A model generated the notes under the pieces. The model did no database searches. It was not told the origin of the DNA and was given only the letters and a program-made list of their open reading frames with translations. The translations under genes and the position numbers were made by a program. Positions 36,108-51,020 of a DNA stretch of 64,000 bases are shown piece by piece; position 1 is the first letter of the stretch, and the number at the start of each line of letters is the position of its first letter. The stretch covers positions 1-64,000 of the IMG/VR virus record IMGVR_UViG_3300027759_000045; one strand, given 5' to 3'.

Positions 36108-37085
36108 ATGTCAATCAAAAAATTATTTGCTGTGCTATTATTAGCACCTGCCCTGGCGTTTGCTTGGGAACCCACAAAGCCTGTCACTGTGTATATTGGT
36201 AACACACCCGGTGCTGGCAATGAAATGGCCTTTCGGAAACTGGCTGATATTGTACAAAAATCCAACCCTAAATTTGTTTATGTTGTGCAGAACATACCCG
36301 GTGCTGATAGTGTCATTGCCAACAACCGGTTTTTGGAAGTGGCCAATGATGGCTACACCATCAACTTGCCCAGCCATATGTCAAGCTATGTGACAAATGA
36401 TATCTGGGAAAAGTCGATTAAAAAGTACAACTACGACAGCTTCGTGGATGTGTTGACCATGGGCAAAAGCCCACTGGTATTAGTTGCCAGTCCTCGAAGC
36501 GGCATTAACACTCCGCAGGAGTTTGCAAAGTATATTCAATCAGGTAGAACAATCAACATTGCCATTGGTGGTGGCGCACATCGCACAGCGTTTGAATACT
36601 TGATGGACAAAGGTCGTGGCAACAAAGACACTGTAAAACCGATCAAATTCAATGGTCCAATGCCAGCAGTGACCAGTGCCGCAAGCTATGACGGCAAAAC
36701 AGGCACAGAATTTGCCATCATACCTATTGCAGTGGCCAAAGCACTAGTAGATGCTGGTAAGGTCAAACCAATTGGATTCACTGGCACACAGAAAATGTCG
36801 CAGTTTCCCACGGTTCCATTGCTTAATACAATAGCACCAGGCATCAATGTATATGCGGCCTGGTCAATTCAATTGCCGCCTGGCACAGATCGAGAAATTG
36901 TTGCCTGGTATCAACAACAATTTAGTCGTGCAGTTCGTTCAGCAGAATACAAAGAGTACACGGATGCCAATGTTATATTCTACGTGGAAGATGAATTAAC
37001 TCCTGCAGGGCTAAAGCGTCACATGGACGATTTAAGAGCTGCCTTTATTCCTGTACTGAGTCGAATTGATTTAAATAAAGAATGA
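36108..37085 (+). CDS. Bug/TctC-family periplasmic solute-binding protein
   Basis: Signal peptide, P.KPV, NIPGA, DGYT, PLVLV, P.VP, W...LPPGT. Confidence 0.85.
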   Translation: MSIKKLFAVLLLAPALAFAWEPTKPVTVYIGNTPGAGNEMAFRKLADIVQKSNPKFVYVVQNIPGADSVIANNRFLEVANDGYTINLPSHMSSYVTNDIWEKSIKKYNYDSFVDVLTMGKSPLVLVASPRSGINTPQEFAKYIQSGRTINIAIGGGAHRTAFEYLMDKGRGNKDTVKPIKFNGPMPAVTSAASYDGKTGTEFAIIPIAVAKALVDAGKVKPIGFTGTQKMSQFPTVPLLNTIAPGINVYAAWSIQLPPGTDREIVAWYQQQFSRAVRSAEYKEYTDANVIFYVEDELTPAGLKRHMDDLRAAFIPVLSRIDLNKE

Positions 37086-37708
37086 AATATATCTTTGTGG
37101 CCGGTGCTCCGGGCTCAAAATGGAGCAGTGTAGTTAAAAATATCTACTACAGTCCTGACATTGATCGGTCAGACTACAGAGATGAATGGACTTATTATCA
37201 CGATGCGTCTGGCACTCGCGAACTCATGCACCTGGGTGCGTATTTTGATCCGGGCATGGCCTCTGCATTGCCCGAGGATTTGACCACACTGACTAGATCT
37301 GAATTAGAAAAAATCTTTGCTGAACCATTTAAATTCAAAGAATCTCATAGCACACGAATTATCAAAAGTCATGTGTTCTCAACGCATCTTGAGTATCTGC
37401 GAGAACAGTTTCCGGAGTCGCCCATTGTGTTGGTGCATCGCCCAGACGATGCTTGCCTGGGCTGGTGGGTCAAGTGCGGGCACTTTGACATAACATATCC
37501 CTCCTATGACATATATTATAAAAACTTAAAGACTATGGCCACGATAATTAAACAACAGAATGTGGGAATTGTCAATGCTTCATTAAAGTACCCAGGACAA
37601 CATCCGTTGACCAATCAACAGTTGGCACGAATGCTGGGTATAGCAGTACCGCCAAAGGAGTATGAACAAAGCTATGGCGCAAGCGACATAAGGGTAACAG
37701 TAATATGA
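37082..37708 (+). CDS. Sulfotransferase-like P-loop protein
   Basis: FVAGAPGSKWSS, IIKSH, VLVHR. Confidence 0.5.
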   Translation: MKYIFVAGAPGSKWSSVVKNIYYSPDIDRSDYRDEWTYYHDASGTRELMHLGAYFDPGMASALPEDLTTLTRSELEKIFAEPFKFKESHSTRIIKSHVFSTHLEYLREQFPESPIVLVHRPDDACLGWWVKCGHFDITYPSYDIYYKNLKTMATIIKQQNVGIVNASLKYPGQHPLTNQQLARMLGIAVPPKEYEQSYGASDIRVTVI

Positions 37709-38367
37709 TAACAGAAGAATTTAAAAGCAGTTGGGATTTTACCAAGAGCCGCAGTACATATCACTTTGATAGTACTGTAAAAGATGCACCGGAATCTGTG
37801 CTCACACACTTAGGGCACATTGAGCCTACTTGGCAAGCAGACATAGCAGACATTGTCAATCATTCTACACCAGCCACCTGGGAAACACGTGGCTACAAAG
37901 GAGAAGGCGTGCTGCCACCACGTGAAGATTTGCTTGCTGAAGAGTACGATGTCTCTCGTGTGGGTGCTGATCCCAAAATGATCATTACACACTTGAACTG
38001 GCAGATACCAGATTCACTGAAAGCAATTACTGCGGCATTTGGACTAGATGACTGTATGGAACGCATACACATACAACAGCCAGGCGAAGTGTGGAATCTG
38101 CACATGGACAAACTGCAAAAATGGTCGCCTGAAGATCCCAGTCGTGTGGGCCGGTACTTTGTTCAACTAACAGACTGGCAACCTGGACAGTTCTGGGAGT
38201 ACGGCAACTATCACTGGAATCAATGGTCAGCAGGAGATGTATCAACTTTTGACTGGGCAAACATACCACACAGCACTGCCAATGCTGGCCATCATCCTCG
38301 GGTGACATTTCAATTAACTGGTGTTATTACAGATCAGACTCGCCGCTTCCTAGCATCTCTACAATGA
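37705..38367 (+). CDS. 2OG-Fe(II)/Asp-hydroxylase-like double-stranded beta-helix oxygenase
   Basis: QQPG...LHMD, PHSTAN.G..PR..FQ. Confidence 0.7.
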   Translation: MITEEFKSSWDFTKSRSTYHFDSTVKDAPESVLTHLGHIEPTWQADIADIVNHSTPATWETRGYKGEGVLPPREDLLAEEYDVSRVGADPKMIITHLNWQIPDSLKAITAAFGLDDCMERIHIQQPGEVWNLHMDKLQKWSPEDPSRVGRYFVQLTDWQPGQFWEYGNYHWNQWSAGDVSTFDWANIPHSTANAGHHPRVTFQLTGVITDQTRRFLASLQ

Positions 38368-38588
38368 ACAAGTATCATGTTAGATTCAACACCAAGCACA
38401 ACGGCAGTGAGTTAGTGTGGCGCATCTTTGAAAATGGTCAGGAGCATCTAGCCTCTGATGTTCGCATCATTGGAGAAACCTACACCGAATGCACAAACGA
38501 ACACGGCGAAACAAAATGGAACATTGCTTGTGAAGGTCGAATGGTCTGGGTTGATCAAGTTGCTGTAATTGTCACAGACAAAGACTAA
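38364..38588 (+). CDS. Hypothetical protein
   Basis: 74 aa coupled ORF. Confidence 0.6.
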   Translation: MNKYHVRFNTKHNGSELVWRIFENGQEHLASDVRIIGETYTECTNEHGETKWNIACEGRMVWVDQVAVIVTDKD

Positions 38589-38622
38589 CAATGAAAAAAC
38601 ACTTTTAAAAAGAATTGGATAG

Positions 38623-39408
38623 ATGACTAATTGGGCACTGCAATATTCCGGCGGATCTGGTGGATTTCTATTGTTACATCTTTTGTTATTGTCGGACAAG
38701 TTTTACACTGCATTTGACAGAAATATACCACTGGCCCAACTAATTCAAGAACACTGGAATATAAAATCTCCTGATCAATGGAAAAGCACTGAAATATGGC
38801 CAGATGCTCAAATCACACTAGACGCCCGGGTTGATTTTGATAAAATCTATTTTCAATGCAATCCATTTGAATACGATTACAACACTGTCTTGAAAGAATT
38901 AGTTTATAAAAAAATTGTTATCTATACAGATTACCAAAGCCAATTGTTATTAGCTCATTATAAAAAAGCAAATTGGTATATTAGTGTCCCTGGGCAAGAT
39001 TTAAAATATATTAAATTTAAAAAAGTTTTAAACAACTGGAAAGACCATTACGCCAATATAAAAGATCCATTGTGGCCAAAATGTCTCAGTGTCAGACATA
39101 TCGATCGTCTACCTGAGAATATACAAAAAGAAATATTAGCAGATCCGTATACTGAATATTTTTTAAATCTTACATATCAGGATCCTAGTGCGTATTTTAA
39201 CAATGAACTGGTGCATGAACCTATGATACCCTATTTAGAATCAGCCGATGTGGCTGTTAAATTGCAAGATTTAGTTAACAGCAATGGAAAAATTTTAGAA
39301 ACATTGTTCGACATACCTAAAATTAATAATAAACAACTGTTGTTGTTAAAAAAATGGAAACAACATCATACCAATGAGTTATTAATCAGCATAGGAATAA
39401 CCCCATAA
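38623..39408 (+). CDS. Sulfotransferase-like/P-loop protein (AT-rich) with DPxWP module
   Basis: YSGGSGGFLL N-terminal loop; YANIKDPLWPKC..LPE.I..EI. Confidence 0.45.
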   Translation: MTNWALQYSGGSGGFLLLHLLLLSDKFYTAFDRNIPLAQLIQEHWNIKSPDQWKSTEIWPDAQITLDARVDFDKIYFQCNPFEYDYNTVLKELVYKKIVIYTDYQSQLLLAHYKKANWYISVPGQDLKYIKFKKVLNNWKDHYANIKDPLWPKCLSVRHIDRLPENIQKEILADPYTEYFLNLTYQDPSAYFNNELVHEPMIPYLESADVAVKLQDLVNSNGKILETLFDIPKINNKQLLLLKKWKQHHTNELLISIGITP

Positions 39409-39421
39409 TACTTTTAATAAA

Positions 39422-40051
39422 ATGTCAAAAACACTTTTAATTTTAACAGGCCCACAGGGATCTGGCAATCATTTATGGAGTAAAATATTTGCACAGCACC
39501 CTGATGTGTACGGATGGCATGCACTGTTGCATGAATACTGGATAGGGCATGATCAAGAGCCCTTTGCTGAATACTGGGAAAATCCTGATTTACTCAAAGA
39601 CTTTGACTGGAGCCGCTGTGATTACTTTGTCACCAGTGTCAGCACACCTTACATGTTCAATGGTGAACGCACAGTACCCGACATTGTGCGTTTTGCTGCC
39701 ACTGCCATGGGCCTGGGTATCTGTGTAAAAATTGCTGTGATTGGACGAGATTGCAACATACTAAACTATCAACAAACTCGTGTGCGCGGCGAGCCCACTG
39801 TTGATATTGCACTTGCTGAATACAAAAAACTACGCACTTGGGATCCGGTATTTTTAAGTTATGAATTATTGCACTTGTACCGAGAAGATTACCTGCGTCA
39901 GATTGCAAAGCAGTTGGAATTCCCAATGGATTTTACGCATCCGCAGTTAACAAATATTCTAGTAGATGATACCAACAGTAAATACTTTCACCCTGTGGCG
40001 CATCATGCCACAGATGATCTAGCACAACATGCTTCAAGGCAATGGCGATAA
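39422..40051 (+). CDS. Sulfotransferase-like P-loop protein
   Basis: ILTGPQGSGNHLW, VIGRD, FLSYE.L. Confidence 0.55.
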   Translation: MSKTLLILTGPQGSGNHLWSKIFAQHPDVYGWHALLHEYWIGHDQEPFAEYWENPDLLKDFDWSRCDYFVTSVSTPYMFNGERTVPDIVRFAATAMGLGICVKIAVIGRDCNILNYQQTRVRGEPTVDIALAEYKKLRTWDPVFLSYELLHLYREDYLRQIAKQLEFPMDFTHPQLTNILVDDTNSKYFHPVAHHATDDLAQHASRQWR

Positions 40052-40890
40052 TTCACCCAATTTTTCTGTCAGAATTATATTTGTCTACTTATGCTGATAC
40101 ACATTGGCACAACTCTGGTCTGGACAGTCCAGAGTTGTGTTCAAATCGTCAACATTATTTTTCATACCCGCATAAAGTTGAGTATTGTTATAATAGTCGA
40201 GGCTTCAGAGATGCAGAATGGCCTGATGATCTAGCCGATGTAATATGGTGCGTCGGCGATAGCTTCACAGTGGGACTGGGAAGTCCGCGTGAACACACAT
40301 GGCCTTATATACTACAGCAACGCTTGGGTCGGCGCACAATAAATCTCAGCCTGGATGGAGCAAGCAATAATTGGATTGCCAGGATTGGATCTGCCATCCT
40401 AGCGGAATTCCCCAATGCGGTTATTGTGACCCAATGGAGTTTCCTACACAGAAGAGAGTTATCTGTGGAAGCATCGTTAAAAAAAGGATTCCCAGAGTTT
40501 TATAAAGCAGTAGCAGATCACAGTTGGCCGCTGTGCAATAATTTAGATGATTTCAAAGAATTACCCGAATGGATAAAACAAGAAATAAAACAACTGCACA
40601 ATTGGCCAGACTGCCTGACTACTAGTGAAAAGAGACGGGCATATTATATAAATTCCACAACCGAAGAGGATGTTGTTAATACTCAATTCTGCATACAACA
40701 ACTTCAAGGCAATGTTGTGCATTCTGCTATTCCAAATTGGGCACCACCCGGAATTGATTTAAACTATGATAATATAATATTAACCAAGCAGTTGGATCGT
40801 GCTCGCGACGACTTTCATTATGACATTCTTACTAGCAATTCCTTAATAGATCAAATTATTCCAGCCTTGGCATCGAATGCCAGGTACTAA
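40042..40890 (+). CDS. SGNH-like protein with DxxWP module
   Basis: YNSRGFRD, GDSFT.G, NLS.DGASN, ARDDFHY. Confidence 0.55.
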   Translation: MAIIHPIFLSELYLSTYADTHWHNSGLDSPELCSNRQHYFSYPHKVEYCYNSRGFRDAEWPDDLADVIWCVGDSFTVGLGSPREHTWPYILQQRLGRRTINLSLDGASNNWIARIGSAILAEFPNAVIVTQWSFLHRRELSVEASLKKGFPEFYKAVADHSWPLCNNLDDFKELPEWIKQEIKQLHNWPDCLTTSEKRRAYYINSTTEEDVVNTQFCIQQLQGNVVHSAIPNWAPPGIDLNYDNIILTKQLDRARDDFHYDILTSNSLIDQIIPALASNARY

Positions 40891-41983
40891 TTTCATCCAG
40901 TGCAATTTTCTTGATATCAGCATCTGTATAAAGATTGCCTACTCCGCTTTGCTTGACCCAGTTATTGTATGCTTCTGCGCATTGATCAAAGTTGCGTATT
41001 AGTCGGCGTTTTTCCATCATGGTTTGCAATTTAATGGGAACACCTGTGACCATTATTTTATGCTGAACTAACTCATTGATTGCTTTGTAACTGTCAATAT
41101 ACTTGCCGGTATGGTGTTGTAAAAACTGTTTATCACCGGCGCTTAGACTATTGAGAATTGCATTTCTAGTCAACACAGGTGCTAGATCTACACTGTCCAG
41201 CTGGTCCGTAGAGTCGAACGTGATTTTTAAGTTGTCAGGCGCAGGCAACTGCGCACTTATACCGCTTATGTCGCTGGCAAGATAATGACATCGATTCCAG
41301 TCTTGAAATTCAATGCCAAATGTGTCATGCCAGGATTTTGTTTGTTGTCCACCAAATATATCTAAACCTAATATATACTCTTCAATTTTAAGCATGTGTG
41401 TTTCGTATTCAAAATAGGAACTTACAGTAAAATGATCATTGACCCACTGTAAATAATTAACATACTTGTTAAGATATGACAGCATTACATTTACATCAAC
41501 GGTAATTCTATTTTGATATATGCCAGCAAATGCATCGATCTTTTCTTGGTGCGTATAAACATTTAACTTTTTTGAATGTCCTTGAATACACCAACTCAGT
41601 GCGTGTTCTAGTAGATTTTTTCGTTGAGCACTGATTATAAAAAAGTTATCGTTTAGGTATTGATAAAACGGTACTTGATTGGCCAATGAATCTTGTCGAT
41701 TCACAATGTGATAATGTGCCAATCGTGCTGTCTTATAGTGATCTGTACTGTGCAAGTGTTCAATTATTTCATTGAGTGTTTGATAATATCCCCAAGGGCG
41801 GTCAGTTGGTTTACCCAGCACTTCTTGATTGAACACAGGACTGTAGTATTTCATTAGCCCGTTTGTGAGTTCATGCAAATTGATTACAGGGCGATCGTAC
41901 GTGTGCGATTGCATGTACACTGTGATCAGACGTTGCAATAGTGTGCTGCCAACTCGGTCCGGGGTTAAAATTAATACATTCAT
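40856..41983 (-). CDS. Sulfotransferase-like (Stf0-like) protein
   Basis: LTPDRVGSTLL PAPS-loop-like motif; R.NLLEHALSW. Confidence 0.6.
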   Translation of the reverse strand: MNVLILTPDRVGSTLLQRLITVYMQSHTYDRPVINLHELTNGLMKYYSPVFNQEVLGKPTDRPWGYYQTLNEIIEHLHSTDHYKTARLAHYHIVNRQDSLANQVPFYQYLNDNFFIISAQRKNLLEHALSWCIQGHSKKLNVYTHQEKIDAFAGIYQNRITVDVNVMLSYLNKYVNYLQWVNDHFTVSSYFEYETHMLKIEEYILGLDIFGGQQTKSWHDTFGIEFQDWNRCHYLASDISGISAQLPAPDNLKITFDSTDQLDSVDLAPVLTRNAILNSLSAGDKQFLQHHTGKYIDSYKAINELVQHKIMVTGVPIKLQTMMEKRRLIRNFDQCAEAYNNWVKQSGVGNLYTDADIKKIALDEISTWHSMPRLE

Positions 41984-41988
41984 GCAAT

Positions 41989-42001
41989 TACTTAGTAAAT
42001 A
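41989..42001. promoter_or_regulatory. Back-to-back late-type boxes (TAAGTA minus, TAAATA plus)
   Basis: Each lies 5 nt from its ATG. Confidence 0.6.
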
Positions 42002-42006
42002 GCACT

Positions 42007-42801
42007 ATGACACAACGTATTTTAATCATGGGCTTACCAGGAGCCGGCAAAACATATCTGGCACAACACATTGTAGATCACTTACAAGCAGAAAAGAAAC
42101 GGGTAGGTTGGCTCAACGCTGACGATGTACGTAAAAAGTACAACGACTGGGACTTTAGCGAAGCAGGCCGTATTCGACAAAGTCTACGTATGAGAGAACT
42201 GGCAGACACAATGGCCGATGTTGATTATGTGATCTGCGACTTTGTTGCTCCATTGGTTGAGATGCGCAACAACTTCAAAGCAGACTGGACTGTGTGGGTT
42301 GATACCATTGACAAAGGTAGATACGAAGACACTAACCGGGCATTTGTTCCTCCTGAACAGTATGATTTTAGAATCACAGAACAGCACAGTGAGAAATGGG
42401 GCGAGTTTATTGCCGCGCATATCTTAGACAACCGTCGTAGACCGGTGTTTGACTGGCAAAAGGAAACTGTTGAACAACTTGGCAGATGGCAACCTTGGCA
42501 TGCAGGTCACCGTGCGTTGTTTGACAGACTGATACAAAAAACAGGGCAAGTATGCATTATGATTCGTGATTGTCAAGGATGGCAAGGTTCAAATCCATTT
42601 GCAATTGATCAGGTCAAAAACGCTATCAAACGAGATTTAGACATGATGTATCAAGGTCAATACGAAATACTGGTAGTTCCTAATATTACTCATATTGGAT
42701 ACGGTCGCGGAGTAGGCTACACAATGGCAGAAGAAAAATTCGACGAATCTATTACAAACATATCCGGGACAGAGATCCGCAAAAGCCTGGGATTAAAGTA
42801 A
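42007..42801 (+). CDS. Adenylylsulfate-kinase-like domain fused to an HxGH nucleotidyltransferase domain
   Basis: MGLPGAGKT, LNAD.VR..DFS..GR, FVAP..MR; GRWQPWHAGH, THIGYGR, ISGTEIR. Confidence 0.75.
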   Translation: MTQRILIMGLPGAGKTYLAQHIVDHLQAEKKRVGWLNADDVRKKYNDWDFSEAGRIRQSLRMRELADTMADVDYVICDFVAPLVEMRNNFKADWTVWVDTIDKGRYEDTNRAFVPPEQYDFRITEQHSEKWGEFIAAHILDNRRRPVFDWQKETVEQLGRWQPWHAGHRALFDRLIQKTGQVCIMIRDCQGWQGSNPFAIDQVKNAIKRDLDMMYQGQYEILVVPNITHIGYGRGVGYTMAEEKFDESITNISGTEIRKSLGLK

Positions 42802-48731: not shown

Positions 48732-51020
48732 ATGCAAAATAATCCTGAAATTGAAAAAATTGTCAACAATGCTGTGGCCATTGCAAAAGCTCACAATCAT
48801 GCTTATGTGATAACCGAACATGTACTGATGGCAATGATTCAACACGCACCATTTCGAGCATTGTTGGTGAAATATGGCACAGCCGTTGAACAGTTCGAAG
48901 GCGAACTAAGTGCATATATTCTAGCGCAGGTTAGTTTAATAACCAGCAAAGAAGATGTTACACCTCGCAAAACCAATGGCCTTGAGCGCATGTTTAATCG
49001 TGCGCTGACACAGGTACTGTTTACCGGACGCAGATCAATCACATTGCTGGATCTGTACCTGGCCATGATGGCAGAAAATAACAGCCATGCACATTACTTT
49101 TTGTTGAAGTATGGCGTTCACAAAACTGAATTTGCTGAGTTCTATCAGAAAAATCATGCCTCTGCCTCTAAAGAGTTGAGCAATGAAACTGCAAACGAAA
49201 TCCTGGATCAACACTGTACAAATCTAAGCAAACGAGCTGCCGACGGACAATTAGAACCCATGATCGGCCGGGCCGCAGAACTGGAAGAAATGATCACTGT
49301 GTTGGCTCGCAAGTTCAAGGCCAACGTGCTGATGGTGGGCGATCCTGGTGTGGGCAAAACTGCCATCATTGACGGACTAGCACAGGAGATCAACGCTGGC
49401 CGTGTTCCAGAGTTTCTTAAAGGTTCTGAAGTTTGGGGATTAGAGATTGGTTCGCTGTTGGCTGGCAGCAAATACCGTGGTGAGTTTGAAGAAAAGTTCA
49501 AAGACGTTATCTCTGCACTGGAAACTAAAAAGAACTGTGTGCTGTTTATCGACGAAGCGCACACCATGATGGGCGCAGGAACTTCGGGATCAAGCAGTTT
49601 AGACTTTGCCAACATGATCAAACCAGCAATTACCAAGGGCAACATCAAGGTAATTGCGAGTACCACATGGGAAGAATACTACGAGAGCTTTGAAAAAGAT
49701 CGTGCGCTGATGCGCAGATTCCACAGAGTCAATATTGGTGAGCCTGATTCAGCCACCACAGAGCAAATTCTAATTGGCATTAGCCCGCGTCTAGAAACAT
49801 TCCACAATGTACTGATTGACACAGAAGCAATGACAGCGGCTGTGGAATTGAGTGGACGCTACATTCATGATCGTAAGAATCCTGACAAGTCAATCGACCT
49901 GTTGGATGGCGCCTGTGCTGGAGAGCGTGTGAAAGACCTGGGCACAGTTACCATCAACCGTGACATGATCATGGCGCAACTCAGTCGTGTTACCGGAGTT
50001 CCTTTAGATAGATTGCAAAACGAACGCAGTACCAAGGTTACCGAGCTGGAAGGTAACATCAAGCAGTTCTTATACGGGCAAGACCAAGCCATTGACACTG
50101 TGCTAGAACGTATCTACATCAACTTCTCCGGCATTGGCAATGCTAAAAAGCCTGTGGCCAGTTTCTTGTTCCTGGGTCCAACCGGCACAGGTAAAACAGA
50201 ACTGGCCAAACTGCTGTCGCAAAATCTAGACATGCACCTGTTGAAATATGACATGAGTGAGTTCCAAGAGAAGCACAGCATTGCCAGTTTGATTGGTGCC
50301 CCTCCTGGATACGTGGGCTTTGATGACGGCAACGTGGGCGGCGGCAAGTTGATCAGCGACATTTCCAAGCACCCGTTCAGTATCCTGTTGTTTGACGAAA
50401 TTGAAAAGGCACACCCAGATGTGGTCAACATCATGTTGCAGATGCTGGATGAAGCCCGGATCACTGGCAGCAGTGGCAAGTCAGTGGATGTCAAGAACTG
50501 TATCATTATTATGACCAGTAACCTAGGTGCCAGAGACAATGAAAACAACAACATCGGCTTTGGTCAGTCGTTAGAAAAGACCGGCGAAGAAGACCGTGCT
50601 ATGAAAGAGTTCTTCAAGCCGGAACTGCGCAATCGCATTGACAAGGTGTGCAAATTCAACAAGTTAGACAAGCTAGCCATCAAGAAGATTGTGGTCAAGT
50701 TCACAGCAGAGTTACAAGAAACACTGTTGAACAAGAACATTCGTCTTACATTTGCTGAAGATGTGATCGACATGCTGGCAGACAAAGGCTACGATCCCAA
50801 GATGGGTGCTCGTCCATTGGGTCGCAAGATTGACGAACTGATCCGTGTACCACTTAGTAAGCGTATCTTGTTTGATCAAATTGCTGACTGTGCAATTCAT
50901 GCCAGTATGGTCAATGATACAGTGGAATTCACAACCACATCATTGCTGACTGTGCCTGGCCCAGGCGTCAACGACGAAGGATACATTGTAATTGATCAAT
51001 TTACACCCAACATTCAATAA
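48732..51020 (+). CDS. clpA: ClpA-like ATP-dependent chaperone
   Basis: Two AAA+ modules (GDPGVGKT, GPTGTGKT), KYRGEFEE, IGF loop, no ClpB middle domain. Confidence 0.88.
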   Translation: MQNNPEIEKIVNNAVAIAKAHNHAYVITEHVLMAMIQHAPFRALLVKYGTAVEQFEGELSAYILAQVSLITSKEDVTPRKTNGLERMFNRALTQVLFTGRRSITLLDLYLAMMAENNSHAHYFLLKYGVHKTEFAEFYQKNHASASKELSNETANEILDQHCTNLSKRAADGQLEPMIGRAAELEEMITVLARKFKANVLMVGDPGVGKTAIIDGLAQEINAGRVPEFLKGSEVWGLEIGSLLAGSKYRGEFEEKFKDVISALETKKNCVLFIDEAHTMMGAGTSGSSSLDFANMIKPAITKGNIKVIASTTWEEYYESFEKDRALMRRFHRVNIGEPDSATTEQILIGISPRLETFHNVLIDTEAMTAAVELSGRYIHDRKNPDKSIDLLDGACAGERVKDLGTVTINRDMIMAQLSRVTGVPLDRLQNERSTKVTELEGNIKQFLYGQDQAIDTVLERIYINFSGIGNAKKPVASFLFLGPTGTGKTELAKLLSQNLDMHLLKYDMSEFQEKHSIASLIGAPPGYVGFDDGNVGGGKLISDISKHPFSILLFDEIEKAHPDVVNIMLQMLDEARITGSSGKSVDVKNCIIIMTSNLGARDNENNNIGFGQSLEKTGEEDRAMKEFFKPELRNRIDKVCKFNKLDKLAIKKIVVKFTAELQETLLNKNIRLTFAEDVIDMLADKGYDPKMGARPLGRKIDELIRVPLSKRILFDQIADCAIHASMVNDTVEFTTTSLLTVPGPGVNDEGYIVIDQFTPNIQ

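What the first reader, a model, noticed from the sequence alone, without database searches (positions are those of the whole stretch)
39037..40590. A ~33-aa module shared by two unrelated enzyme folds
Seen: HYANIKDPLWPKCLSVRHIDRLPENIQKEI (39037-39138, P-loop-like protein) and FYKAVADHSWPLCNNLDDFKELPEWIKQEI (40489-40590, SGNH-like protein), consensus Y..(I/V).D..WP.C.......LPE.I..EI. Inference: an unnamed portable targeting or scaffold-docking domain that recruits tailoring enzymes to a common substrate or complex.
Basis: partly seen in the sequence, partly recalled or inferred. Interest (0 to 1): 0.6.

Follow-up and report, generated by a model that had tools for sequence, protein, structure and literature searches.

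The report
Portable 45-residue phage enzyme module
A small, previously undescribed three-helix protein module, apparently confined to phages, is attached to the start, the end or an internal loop of many unrelated enzymes in freshwater jumbo phages. It probably serves as a shared recognition or docking handle, but its partner is unknown.

Summary
The window is the first 64 kb of a 346,856-bp freshwater jumbo-phage genome.

- **Copies in this genome.** The motif (consensus W..FY..IKD.SWPDC....DF..LP..IQ.EC...H, about 45 aa) occurs five times. It sits in a sulfotransferase/P-loop-like protein (A), an SGNH hydrolase (B), a second P-loop-like protein (E), an Asp/Asn-hydroxylase-type cupin (D, N-terminal copy) and an unassigned protein (C).
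- **Only the module is shared.** Pairwise BLASTP and profile-profile comparison align nothing else.
- **Wider distribution.** A profile search of 1.84 billion representatives found 788 clusters. The module is N-terminal, internal, C-terminal or tandem, in at least 22 sequence-unlinked host families. These include radical SAM, several methyltransferases, a possible GT10-like glycosyltransferase, DUF6492 and SGNH.
- **Variable within families.** Inside a single enzyme family it is present, cleanly absent, or inserted at a different site.
- **Protein-level selection.** Synonymous sites are scrambled, so it is not a DNA repeat. It is about as conserved as the catalytic domains and is acidic. Its cysteines behave as buried hydrophobic residues.
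- **Unfiled and phage-restricted.** No Pfam, NCBIfam or PDB family matches. A consensus pattern was confirmed 143 times in IMG/VR and 0 times in 185,579 prokaryote genomes.

Portability is shown. The docking function is inferred, and no partner was found.

The parts
38623..39408 (+). Gene A: 261-aa protein with a sulfotransferase/P-loop-kinase-like fold that carries the module internally
   Evidence: ORF. No Pfam hit. AlphaFold2 pLDDT 93.1. Best matches are sulfotransferases, Foldseek E 3.8e-3 and VIA Z 8.7. About 100 metagenomic relatives, all unnamed.
39025..39156 (+). Module copy in A (aa 135-178): helix, WPKC loop, short helix, LP turn, helix
   Evidence: HMM 58.7-80.9 bits. Predicted helices 127-146, 157-162 and 165-173 at pLDDT 92-97. 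Cleanly absent in relatives P0092 and P0094, and at another site in P0101 and P0107.
40042..40890 (+). Gene B: 282-aa SGNH/GDSL-type hydrolase that carries the module internally, after the fourth strand and between the GxSNN and D..H blocks
   Evidence: ORF. Lipase_GDSL_2 E 4.6e-5, below the curated cut-off, covering aa 70-129 only. Family of 1,044 hits.
40480..40614 (+). Module copy in B (aa 147-191)
   Evidence: HMM 60-80 bits. 120 of 121 B-family members have it. P0299, 76% identical to B, has a clean 37-aa in-frame deletion of it. AlphaFold2 of the module alone gave pLDDT 76.7 and three helices.
36108..42801 (.). Context: a conserved cluster around A and B. It holds a TctC-like binding protein, sulfotransferase-like P-loop proteins (37082-37708, 39422-40051, 40856-41983 minus strand) and an APS-kinase/nucleotidyltransferase fusion (41941-42801).
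   Evidence: Pfam TctC 4.7e-19, Sulfotransfer_3 3.8e-4 (below cut-off), APS_kinase 1.5e-11. The same neighbours recur in related IMG/VR contigs L007-L019.

Best explanation
The shared stretch is an autonomous module of about 45 residues, acidic and made of three helices: helix 1 W..FY..IK, a D.SWPDC loop, a short helix ..DF.., an LP turn, and helix 3 ..IQ.EC...H. It is a distinct, uncatalogued protein domain family that appears confined to phages, mostly large freshwater and environmental ones.

It has been fused to, or inserted into surface loops of, many unrelated enzymes. These include radical SAM/SPASM enzymes, several classes of SAM methyltransferase, sulfotransferase- or kinase-like P-loop proteins, SGNH hydrolases, cupin hydroxylases and a possible GT10-like glycosyltransferase family.

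Its position relative to the catalytic domain is not fixed, so it is unlikely to be part of any catalytic machinery. The most likely role is a common recognition or docking handle. It would bring the phage's set of tailoring enzymes to one shared, phage-specific partner such as a scaffold protein, an assembly, or a common handle on their substrate.

Shown: existence, boundaries, portability, presence/absence polymorphism, protein-level selection and enrichment in viruses. Inferred: the helical fold (a model) and the docking function. Unknown: the partner.
For: - **Five copies in one genome, and only the module aligns.** The host proteins share nothing else.
- **Broad distribution.** 788 representative clusters. 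In the best 150 hits there are 41 N-terminal, 72 internal and 47 C-terminal copies, and 6 proteins carry tandem copies.
- **Many host families.** After masking the module, 135 proteins split into 22 BLAST-unlinked families. Pfam hits include Radical_SAM, MTS and other methyltransferases, Asp_Arg_Hydrox, GDSL, DUF6492 and CmcI.
- **Variable within families.** The A family has members with the module at one site, at a second site, or with none. A B-family member 76% identical to B lacks exactly the module. In one radical SAM-SPASM family, 23 ORFs have it and 30 do not.
- **Selection on the protein.** Codons for the invariant Pro, Leu and Tyr differ at third positions among the five copies. The module is about as conserved as the catalytic part: 0.445 against 0.514 in the B family and 0.528 against 0.469 in the A family.
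- **Similar across host families.** Mean identity is 0.40 between families and 0.48 within, as expected under one common constraint.
- **Viral restriction.** A consensus peptide pattern gave 143 confirmed loci in IMG/VR and 0 confirmed in 185,579 prokaryote species genomes. A related 320-kb phage has three copies.
- **Stand-alone form.** A stand-alone tandem-module ORF overlaps the start of a radical SAM-SPASM gene, as accessory recognition proteins often do.
- **Confident model.** Module alone pLDDT 76.7, three helices; inside A pLDDT 92-97.
Against: - No partner or scaffold was found. No neighbouring gene family accompanies the module across host families, apart from the local synteny around B.
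- In A the first module helix is continuous with a host helix, and the whole protein models as one rigid body (pTM 0.86). There the module may act as a built-in lid rather than a free docking domain.
- Most invariant residues (Y, W, P, L, P, I, and Cys replaceable by I/V/L) look like core residues. No conserved binding surface has been demonstrated.
- The enzymes' substrates are unknown, so "common substrate" is unproven.
- The viral-versus-cellular contrast rests on one consensus pattern, confirmed against one query sequence.
Confidence: 0.45

Rival explanations
1. It is a substrate-recognition lid or cap. On this view the module is a prefabricated helical flap placed beside the active site. 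It would recognise a chemical moiety common to the enzymes' substrates, for example a carrier or nucleotide handle, rather than docking to a protein.
For: - In B it is inserted after the fourth beta-strand, between SGNH blocks III and V. That places it on the face where SGNH active sites lie (sequence; the placement is inferred from knowledge of the fold).
- In A it is modelled as a rigid part of the protein.
- The invariant polar residues Y, D and E and the K/R position could line a ligand site.
Against: - The same enzyme family tolerates it at two different sites or not at all.
- N- and C-terminal, tandem and stand-alone forms are hard to reconcile with a fixed geometry next to an active site.
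- No ligand-binding motif is recognisable, and the cysteines are not metal ligands.
Confidence: 0.2
2. It is an oligomerisation element. Modules would bind each other and assemble the different enzymes into a multi-enzyme complex.
For: Several module-bearing enzymes are encoded in one genome and sometimes side by side, A and B being 634 bp apart. Tandem copies exist.
Against: Nearly all modules are acidic (mean net charge -3.6, 138 of 150 negative), which does not favour self-association. No positive evidence exists. The one complex prediction gave no verdict and is not counted either way.
Confidence: 0.1
3. It is a selfish or neutral in-frame insertion, comparable to Rickettsia palindromic elements. 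It would spread among genes and be merely tolerated at surface sites, with no function for the enzymes.
For: Presence/absence polymorphism, different insertion sites within one family and preference for termini and loops.
Against: - There is no DNA-level conservation or repeat structure. Third codon positions are randomised while the amino acids are invariant.
- Conservation equals that of the catalytic domains over deep divergence.
- In 82 of 126 cases, against 15 expected by chance, the nearest module lies in the same host family. The modules are therefore mostly inherited vertically.
Confidence: 0.1
4. It is a divergent homologue of a known helix-LP-helix binding motif. The candidates are the ubiquitin-binding motif (UBM) of Pol iota, Rev1 and HUWE1, or the villin headpiece. 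On this view it binds a ubiquitin-like or actin-like protein.
For: - The second half (DF..LP..I..E) resembles UBM and VHP. The PDB profile search's best hit is the Pol iota UBM (E 0.089).
- Pfam VHP and UBM are each hit weakly by 10 of 150 modules (best E 0.007 and 0.009).
- VIA aligns chicken villin headpiece 1vii over 34 residues at rmsd 2.4 Å (Z 2.1).
Against: All scores are far below the curated thresholds and are not significant. Only about 15 residues are concerned, and the defining N-terminal half (W..FY..IKD.SWPDC) has no counterpart. Foldseek finds nothing.
Confidence: 0.05

Closest known systems
RiPP recognition element (RRE, PqqD-like domain)
   Same: It is a small accessory domain fused to many unrelated tailoring enzymes, including radical SAM-SPASM enzymes and methyltransferases. 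It also occurs as a stand-alone protein encoded next to a radical SAM-SPASM gene.
   Different: The RRE is a winged helix-turn-helix of about 80-90 aa whose beta-sheet pairs with a leader peptide. This module is about 45 aa and all-helical. It has no Pfam match, is often inserted internally, and comes with no identified precursor peptide.
Dockerin and other docking or targeting modules (dockerin-cohesin, PKS/NRPS docking domains)
   Same: It is a short portable module appended to diverse catalytic domains in one organism, sometimes duplicated. The presumed role is assembly on a common partner.
   Different: It has no Ca-binding repeats and no Dockerin Pfam hit. No cohesin-like receptor was found. 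Internal insertion at variable sites is not typical of dockerins.
UBM (PF14377) and villin headpiece (PF02209) helix-LP-helix motifs
   Same: They share an invariant Leu-Pro turn between two short helices, followed by an I/W..E pattern, and are of similar size.
   Different: The similarity is below every threshold and limited to half of the module. The WP loop and first helix are unique. UBM and the villin headpiece are eukaryotic motifs, whereas this module appears only in phages.
Rickettsia palindromic elements (in-frame coding insertions)
   Same: Short insertions found in frame in many unrelated genes, with presence/absence polymorphism.
   Different: RPEs are conserved and palindromic at the DNA level. 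Here only the protein is conserved.

Membership tests
Any curated protein family (Pfam-A 2025 copy, NCBIfam 20.0) | Match to a family model at or above its curated cut-off over the module | tested here: not met
   Pfam on 149 full-length hits: no family is shared by all of them, and none covers the module. Pfam on 150 isolated modules at E<=1: only VHP and UBM, 10 members each, best E 0.007. NCBIfam: nothing relevant.
UBM ubiquitin-binding motif (PF14377) | Profile match above the gathering score (23.3 bits) | tested here: not met
   10 of 150 modules hit, best E 0.0094. PDB profile hit to the Pol iota UBM at E 0.089, 14-15 bits over 16 residues.
UBM ubiquitin-binding motif (PF14377) | Helix-turn-helix with a central invariant Leu-Pro | tested here: met
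   L 149/150 and P 148/150. Helices are predicted on both sides.
UBM ubiquitin-binding motif (PF14377) | Binds ubiquitin | not testable with these tools
   No binding assay is possible, and no ubiquitin-like partner was identified.
Villin headpiece (PF02209) | Profile match above the gathering score (27 bits) | tested here: not met
   B module 14.1 bits, E 0.047. 10 of 150 modules hit, best E 0.0071.
Villin headpiece (PF02209) | Three-helix headpiece fold | tested here: inconclusive
   VIA-align to 1vii_A: Z 2.1, rmsd 2.4 Å, 34 aligned, 21% identity, ranked 31st among unrelated rows. Foldseek finds nothing.
RiPP recognition element (PqqD-like) | Winged helix-turn-helix of about 80-90 aa with a three-stranded sheet | tested here: not met
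   The module is about 45 aa with three helices and no strand. No PqqD Pfam hit.
RiPP recognition element (PqqD-like) | Fused to diverse tailoring enzymes, or stand-alone beside a radical SAM-SPASM gene | tested here: met
   This is an analogy of architecture only.
Dockerin | Duplicated Ca-binding loop-helix segments and a cohesin partner | tested here: not met
   No Dockerin hit, no internal duplication within a module, and no recurrent partner family.
DNA-level mobile in-frame repeat (RPE-like) | Nucleotide-level conservation or palindromic structure of the copies | tested here: not met
   In the DNA alignment of the five copies only first and second codon positions of conserved residues are invariant. 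All four Pro codons are used.
Sulfotransferase fold (host domain of A) | Structural match to PAPS-dependent sulfotransferases | tested here: inconclusive
   Foldseek best hit 1efh, E 3.8e-3, prob 0.98. VIA Z 8.7 over about 165 residues, tied with P-loop kinases at Z about 8. No Pfam hit.
SGNH/GDSL hydrolase (host domain of B) | Block I GDS, block III GxND-like, block V DxxH, and a Pfam match | tested here: inconclusive
   GDSFTVG, DGASNNW and DDFHYD are present and invariant in the family. Lipase_GDSL_2 scores 24.4 bits, below the 32.9 cut-off.

The most novel reading that the evidence does not exclude
The module is the address tag of a phage-specific enzyme-recruitment system. An unidentified phage (or host) receptor or assembly would bind it and gather a whole suite of otherwise unrelated modification enzymes at one site. 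These include radical SAM enzymes, methyltransferases, sulfotransferase-like proteins, hydrolases, hydroxylases and possible glycosyltransferases. The site could be a virion precursor, newly made phage DNA or an infection-specific compartment. Phages would gain or lose targeting of an enzyme simply by inserting or deleting the 45-residue cassette.
Probability: 0.25. Interest if true: 0.8.

Novelty: new variant of a known kind. Interest (0 to 1): 0.6.

Why it matters
Jumbo phages carry large sets of tailoring enzymes whose targets are mostly unknown. A module shared by more than twenty unrelated enzyme families marks these enzymes as belonging together. It also gives a concrete experimental handle, a 45-residue bait, for finding what they act on or assemble with.

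It is also a clean natural example of a mini-domain that moves between termini and different internal loops of enzymes. Natural with/without pairs such as B and P0299 are ready for comparison.

For annotation, it defines a new domain family covering at least 788 protein clusters that are currently labelled "hypothetical".

Tried and rejected
- **Degenerate DNA pattern scan.** It was replaced by the search for related loci with alignment A8.
- **The search for related loci with the 150-module alignment** failed because no stretch was conserved enough.
- **Word-index search restricted to D's module** found only D orthologues.
- **blastn and tblastn against GenBank phages** with the window and with A, B, P0137 and P0124 found no match.
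- **PHROGs** gave nothing for A, B or their neighbours except the kinase fusion.
- **Structure searches with the module model** found nothing meaningful: Foldseek PDB none, VIA wide best Z 3.3, ESM Atlas by shape unrelated rows, and one weak BFVD hit to an uncultured Caudovirales protein at E 0.33.
- **Atlas by features** on the module gave no usable hit.
- **Complex prediction with two copies of the module** scored 0.00 with no verdict. This is not evidence either way.
- **Search for a common neighbour (candidate receptor)** across 98 loci found only the local synteny around B.
- **The genome search** by "relatives" and by a JGI locus was not available for a virus record.
- **Metal-site or disulfide idea rejected.** The two cysteines are replaced by I/V/L in 16 and 68 of 150 copies.
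- **The "bacterial" stand-alone copy (L005) rejected as evidence for cellular occurrence.** It lies directly after a run of N, a scaffold gap.
- **P0126 excluded.** Its nine matching stretches come from a HEAT-like repeat and it is a false positive.
- **Literature searches** for the motif and for the gene-cluster context found nothing relevant.
Full report
**Setting.** The window is the first 64 kb of a single 346,856-bp contig with 43.6% G+C. Phage-type genes include a T4-like clamp loader and an ATP-dependent protease family known from phages. The tools treat the contig as a virus record. An IMG/VR contig is 100% identical over gene B, and a 320-kb IMG/VR contig is a relative. The A-B stretch is held by freshwater and lake-water metagenome runs. 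This is an uncultured freshwater jumbo phage. GenBank phage records gave no match to the region or to proteins A and B.

**Checking the observation.** One is aa 139-172 of the 261-aa protein A (38623-39408, +). The other is aa 150-183 of the 282-aa protein B (40042-40890, +). BLASTP of A against B aligns only this stretch (E 0.002).

A regex on the six-frame translation of the whole genome found two further copies. An HMM built from those four found a fifth at E 3e-12. A richer 150-sequence HMM finds exactly these five and nothing else. The three copies outside the window, all on contig G000:C1, are:
- C: 272 aa, bases 292122-292940 (+), module at aa 148-191.
- D: 269 aa, bases 108061-108867 (-), module at aa 1-45, followed by an Asp_Arg_Hydrox domain (Pfam 2e-11).
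- E: 304 aa, bases 275409-276323 (+), module at aa 127-173, with Ile in place of the first Cys.

Pairwise BLASTP of A against E and of C against D aligns only the module, which sits at different positions. Profile-profile comparison gives the same answer. The A family against the B family aligns 47 columns (E 4.9e-10) and the A family against the E family aligns 40 columns (E 4e-10). In both cases the aligned columns are the module and nothing else.

**Anatomy of the module.** The alignment of 150 copies (A3) gives the consensus W..FY..IKD.SWPDC....DF..LP..IQ.EC...H.
- Y, W, P and E are invariant in 150 of 150 copies.
- D (140), L (149), P (148) and I (138) are nearly invariant.
- I/V, K/R, S/T and F are strongly preferred at four other positions.
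- The first Cys (134/150) is otherwise I/V/L. The second (82/150) is otherwise I/L/V. Both therefore behave as buried hydrophobic positions, not as metal ligands or a disulfide.
- The core is acidic, with mean net charge -3.6 and 138 of 150 copies negative. That argues against nucleic-acid binding.

AlphaFold2 with the 150-row alignment predicts three helices (residues 6-14, 25-29 and 33-42 of the 53-residue segment) at pLDDT 76.7. Inside full-length A the same region is modelled at pLDDT 92-97, with its first helix continuous with a host helix.

**Distribution and host domains.** The five-copy profile was searched against 1.84 billion representative proteins. It returned 788 clusters at E<=1e-3 and 106 at E<=1e-10. 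One of the best 150 (P0126) is a HEAT-like repeat false positive.

In the remaining hits the module is N-terminal 41 times, internal 72 times and C-terminal 47 times. Six proteins carry two copies in tandem. After masking the module, 135 proteins with at least 60 other residues fall into 22 groups not linked by BLASTP at 1e-5.

Pfam recognises the following among them:
- Radical_SAM (14 members);
- MTS, PrmA-like and other class-I methyltransferases, some with an NPPH/F motif;
- Methyltransf_24/CmcI;
- Asp_Arg_Hydrox;
- GDSL;
- DUF6492.

The largest group has 36 proteins of about 400 aa with a C-terminal module and no Pfam match. It is viral (Uroviricota) in the ESM Atlas and has only a weak lead to GT10 fucosyltransferases. 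It shares an H(I/L)TEK...PF motif block with a module-less protein of this genome. All named members are "hypothetical protein". Several lie on contigs of 140-357 kb.

**Portability within families.** This is the strongest new result.
- *A family.* Most members carry the module after the conserved YKKANWY segment. P0092 (212 aa) and P0094 (206 aa) lack it cleanly, and P0102 has a degenerate remnant. P0101 and P0105-P0113 carry it at a different site, after the CNP motif, and lack it at the usual one.
- *B family.* 120 of 121 members have it at the same place. P0299, 76% identical to B, has a clean 37-residue in-frame deletion that removes it.
- *Radical SAM-SPASM family.* Among IMG/VR loci, 23 ORFs of one such family carry the module and 30 do not.

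**It is a protein, not a DNA repeat.** In the DNA alignment of the five copies only first and second codon positions of the conserved residues are invariant. All four Pro codons and several Leu codons are used. The module is about as conserved as the rest of its host protein, at 0.445 against 0.514 mean pairwise identity in the B family and 0.528 against 0.469 in the A family.

For 82 of 126 modules the nearest module lies in the same host family, against 15 expected by chance. Inheritance is therefore mostly vertical. Even so, mean identity between families (0.40) is close to that within families (0.48). This pattern indicates one common constraint on all copies.

**Restriction to viruses.** The consensus peptide pattern [IV][KR]D[PS]SWP[DE](C) matched 156 stretches in IMG/VR, and 143 were confirmed as relatives. 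Sixteen of the 80 loci kept lie on contigs of at least 100 kb. In one genome from each of 185,579 prokaryote species it matched 86 stretches, and none was confirmed. The related 320-kb phage has three copies.

One 57-aa stand-alone copy lies on a bacterial-looking scaffold. It sits directly after a run of N, a scaffold join, so it is not evidence for cellular occurrence. A 106-aa ORF consisting of a partial and a complete module overlaps the start of a radical SAM-SPASM gene. That gene is followed by a P-loop protein and a second radical SAM-SPASM gene.

**Comparison with known families.**
- No Pfam or NCBIfam model covers the module.
- The PDB profile search gives only the Pol iota UBM at E 0.089 over 16 residues.
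- Pfam VHP and UBM are each touched weakly by 10 of 150 modules.
- Structure searches found nothing above noise: Foldseek PDB none, VIA best Z 3.3, and villin headpiece Z 2.1 at rank 31. The Atlas and BFVD searches added nothing significant.

The resemblance to UBM and the villin headpiece is therefore limited to a helix-LP-helix motif, and membership fails. In architecture the closest analogues are RiPP recognition elements and docking modules. The fold and size differ from the RRE, and no dockerin features are present.

For the host proteins, A resembles sulfotransferases and P-loop kinases (Foldseek E 3.8e-3, VIA Z 8.7). It lies in a conserved cluster with a TctC-like protein, other sulfotransferase-like proteins and an APS-kinase fusion.

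**Interpretation.**
- *Established.* This is a new, portable, phage-restricted mini-domain under protein-level selection.
- *Inferred.* It serves as a shared recognition or docking handle. Supporting points are the lack of a fixed geometry relative to the catalytic domains, the tandem and stand-alone forms, the uniform conservation across host families and the absence from cellular genomes.
- *Counter-indications.* No partner was found. Most invariant residues look structural. In A the module is an integral part of the model, which keeps the lid model alive.
- *Self-association.* This could not be assessed, because the complex prediction gave no verdict.
- *Selfish insertion.* This is unlikely given the codon evidence and the level of conservation.

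Noticed in passing
window 36108-42801: A conserved cluster that looks like a sulfation pathway. It holds a TctC-like solute-binding protein with a signal-peptide-like N-terminus (36108-37085) and three or four sulfotransferase-like P-loop proteins. It also holds a fusion of APS kinase with a cytidylyltransferase-like HxGH domain (41941-42801). The same neighbours recur in related IMG/VR contigs.
   Followed up: partly
G000:C1 about 102800-111300 (L002:806-9311): An array of 21 tRNA genes plus a tmRNA-like call by ARAGORN. The module-bearing hydroxylase gene D and an FkbM-like methyltransferase are embedded in it.
   Followed up: no
G000:C1 289900-294200 (L001:3909-8231): IscU/NifU-like and IscA-like Fe-S assembly genes (assigned by eye from the sequences) lie between radical SAM genes, next to module protein C. 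The genome holds several radical SAM-SPASM paralogues with a Cys-rich N-terminal region.
   Followed up: partly
window 40603-40614: A second "WPDC" in B, 26 residues after the first, is not a second module copy. It belongs to the tail of the module (H-x-W-P, conserved in the B family) and scores only 4.6 bits.
   Followed up: yes
window 37705-38367: A 220-aa protein with no Pfam or PHROG hit is conserved next to the B cluster in at least five related contigs. By eye it has an HxD...H pattern that could indicate a cupin oxygenase.
   Followed up: no
L004:11767-16428 (254.7-kb JGI contig): Beside a module-bearing protein lie GTP cyclohydrolase I, PTPS/QueD, HIT and a B12-binding radical SAM gene, plus a sugar epimerase and a DegT-like gene. 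This set is reminiscent of 7-deazaguanine and sugar-nucleotide pathways in phages.
   Followed up: no
L005:1631-1641: A run of N (scaffold join) lies directly upstream of the 57-aa stand-alone module ORF on a scaffold that otherwise looks bacterial. It may be a chimeric scaffold.
   Followed up: yes
window 48732-51020: A 762-aa ATP-dependent protease/AAA+ protein with a very strong PHROG match (phrog_4871, 760 bits).
   Followed up: no
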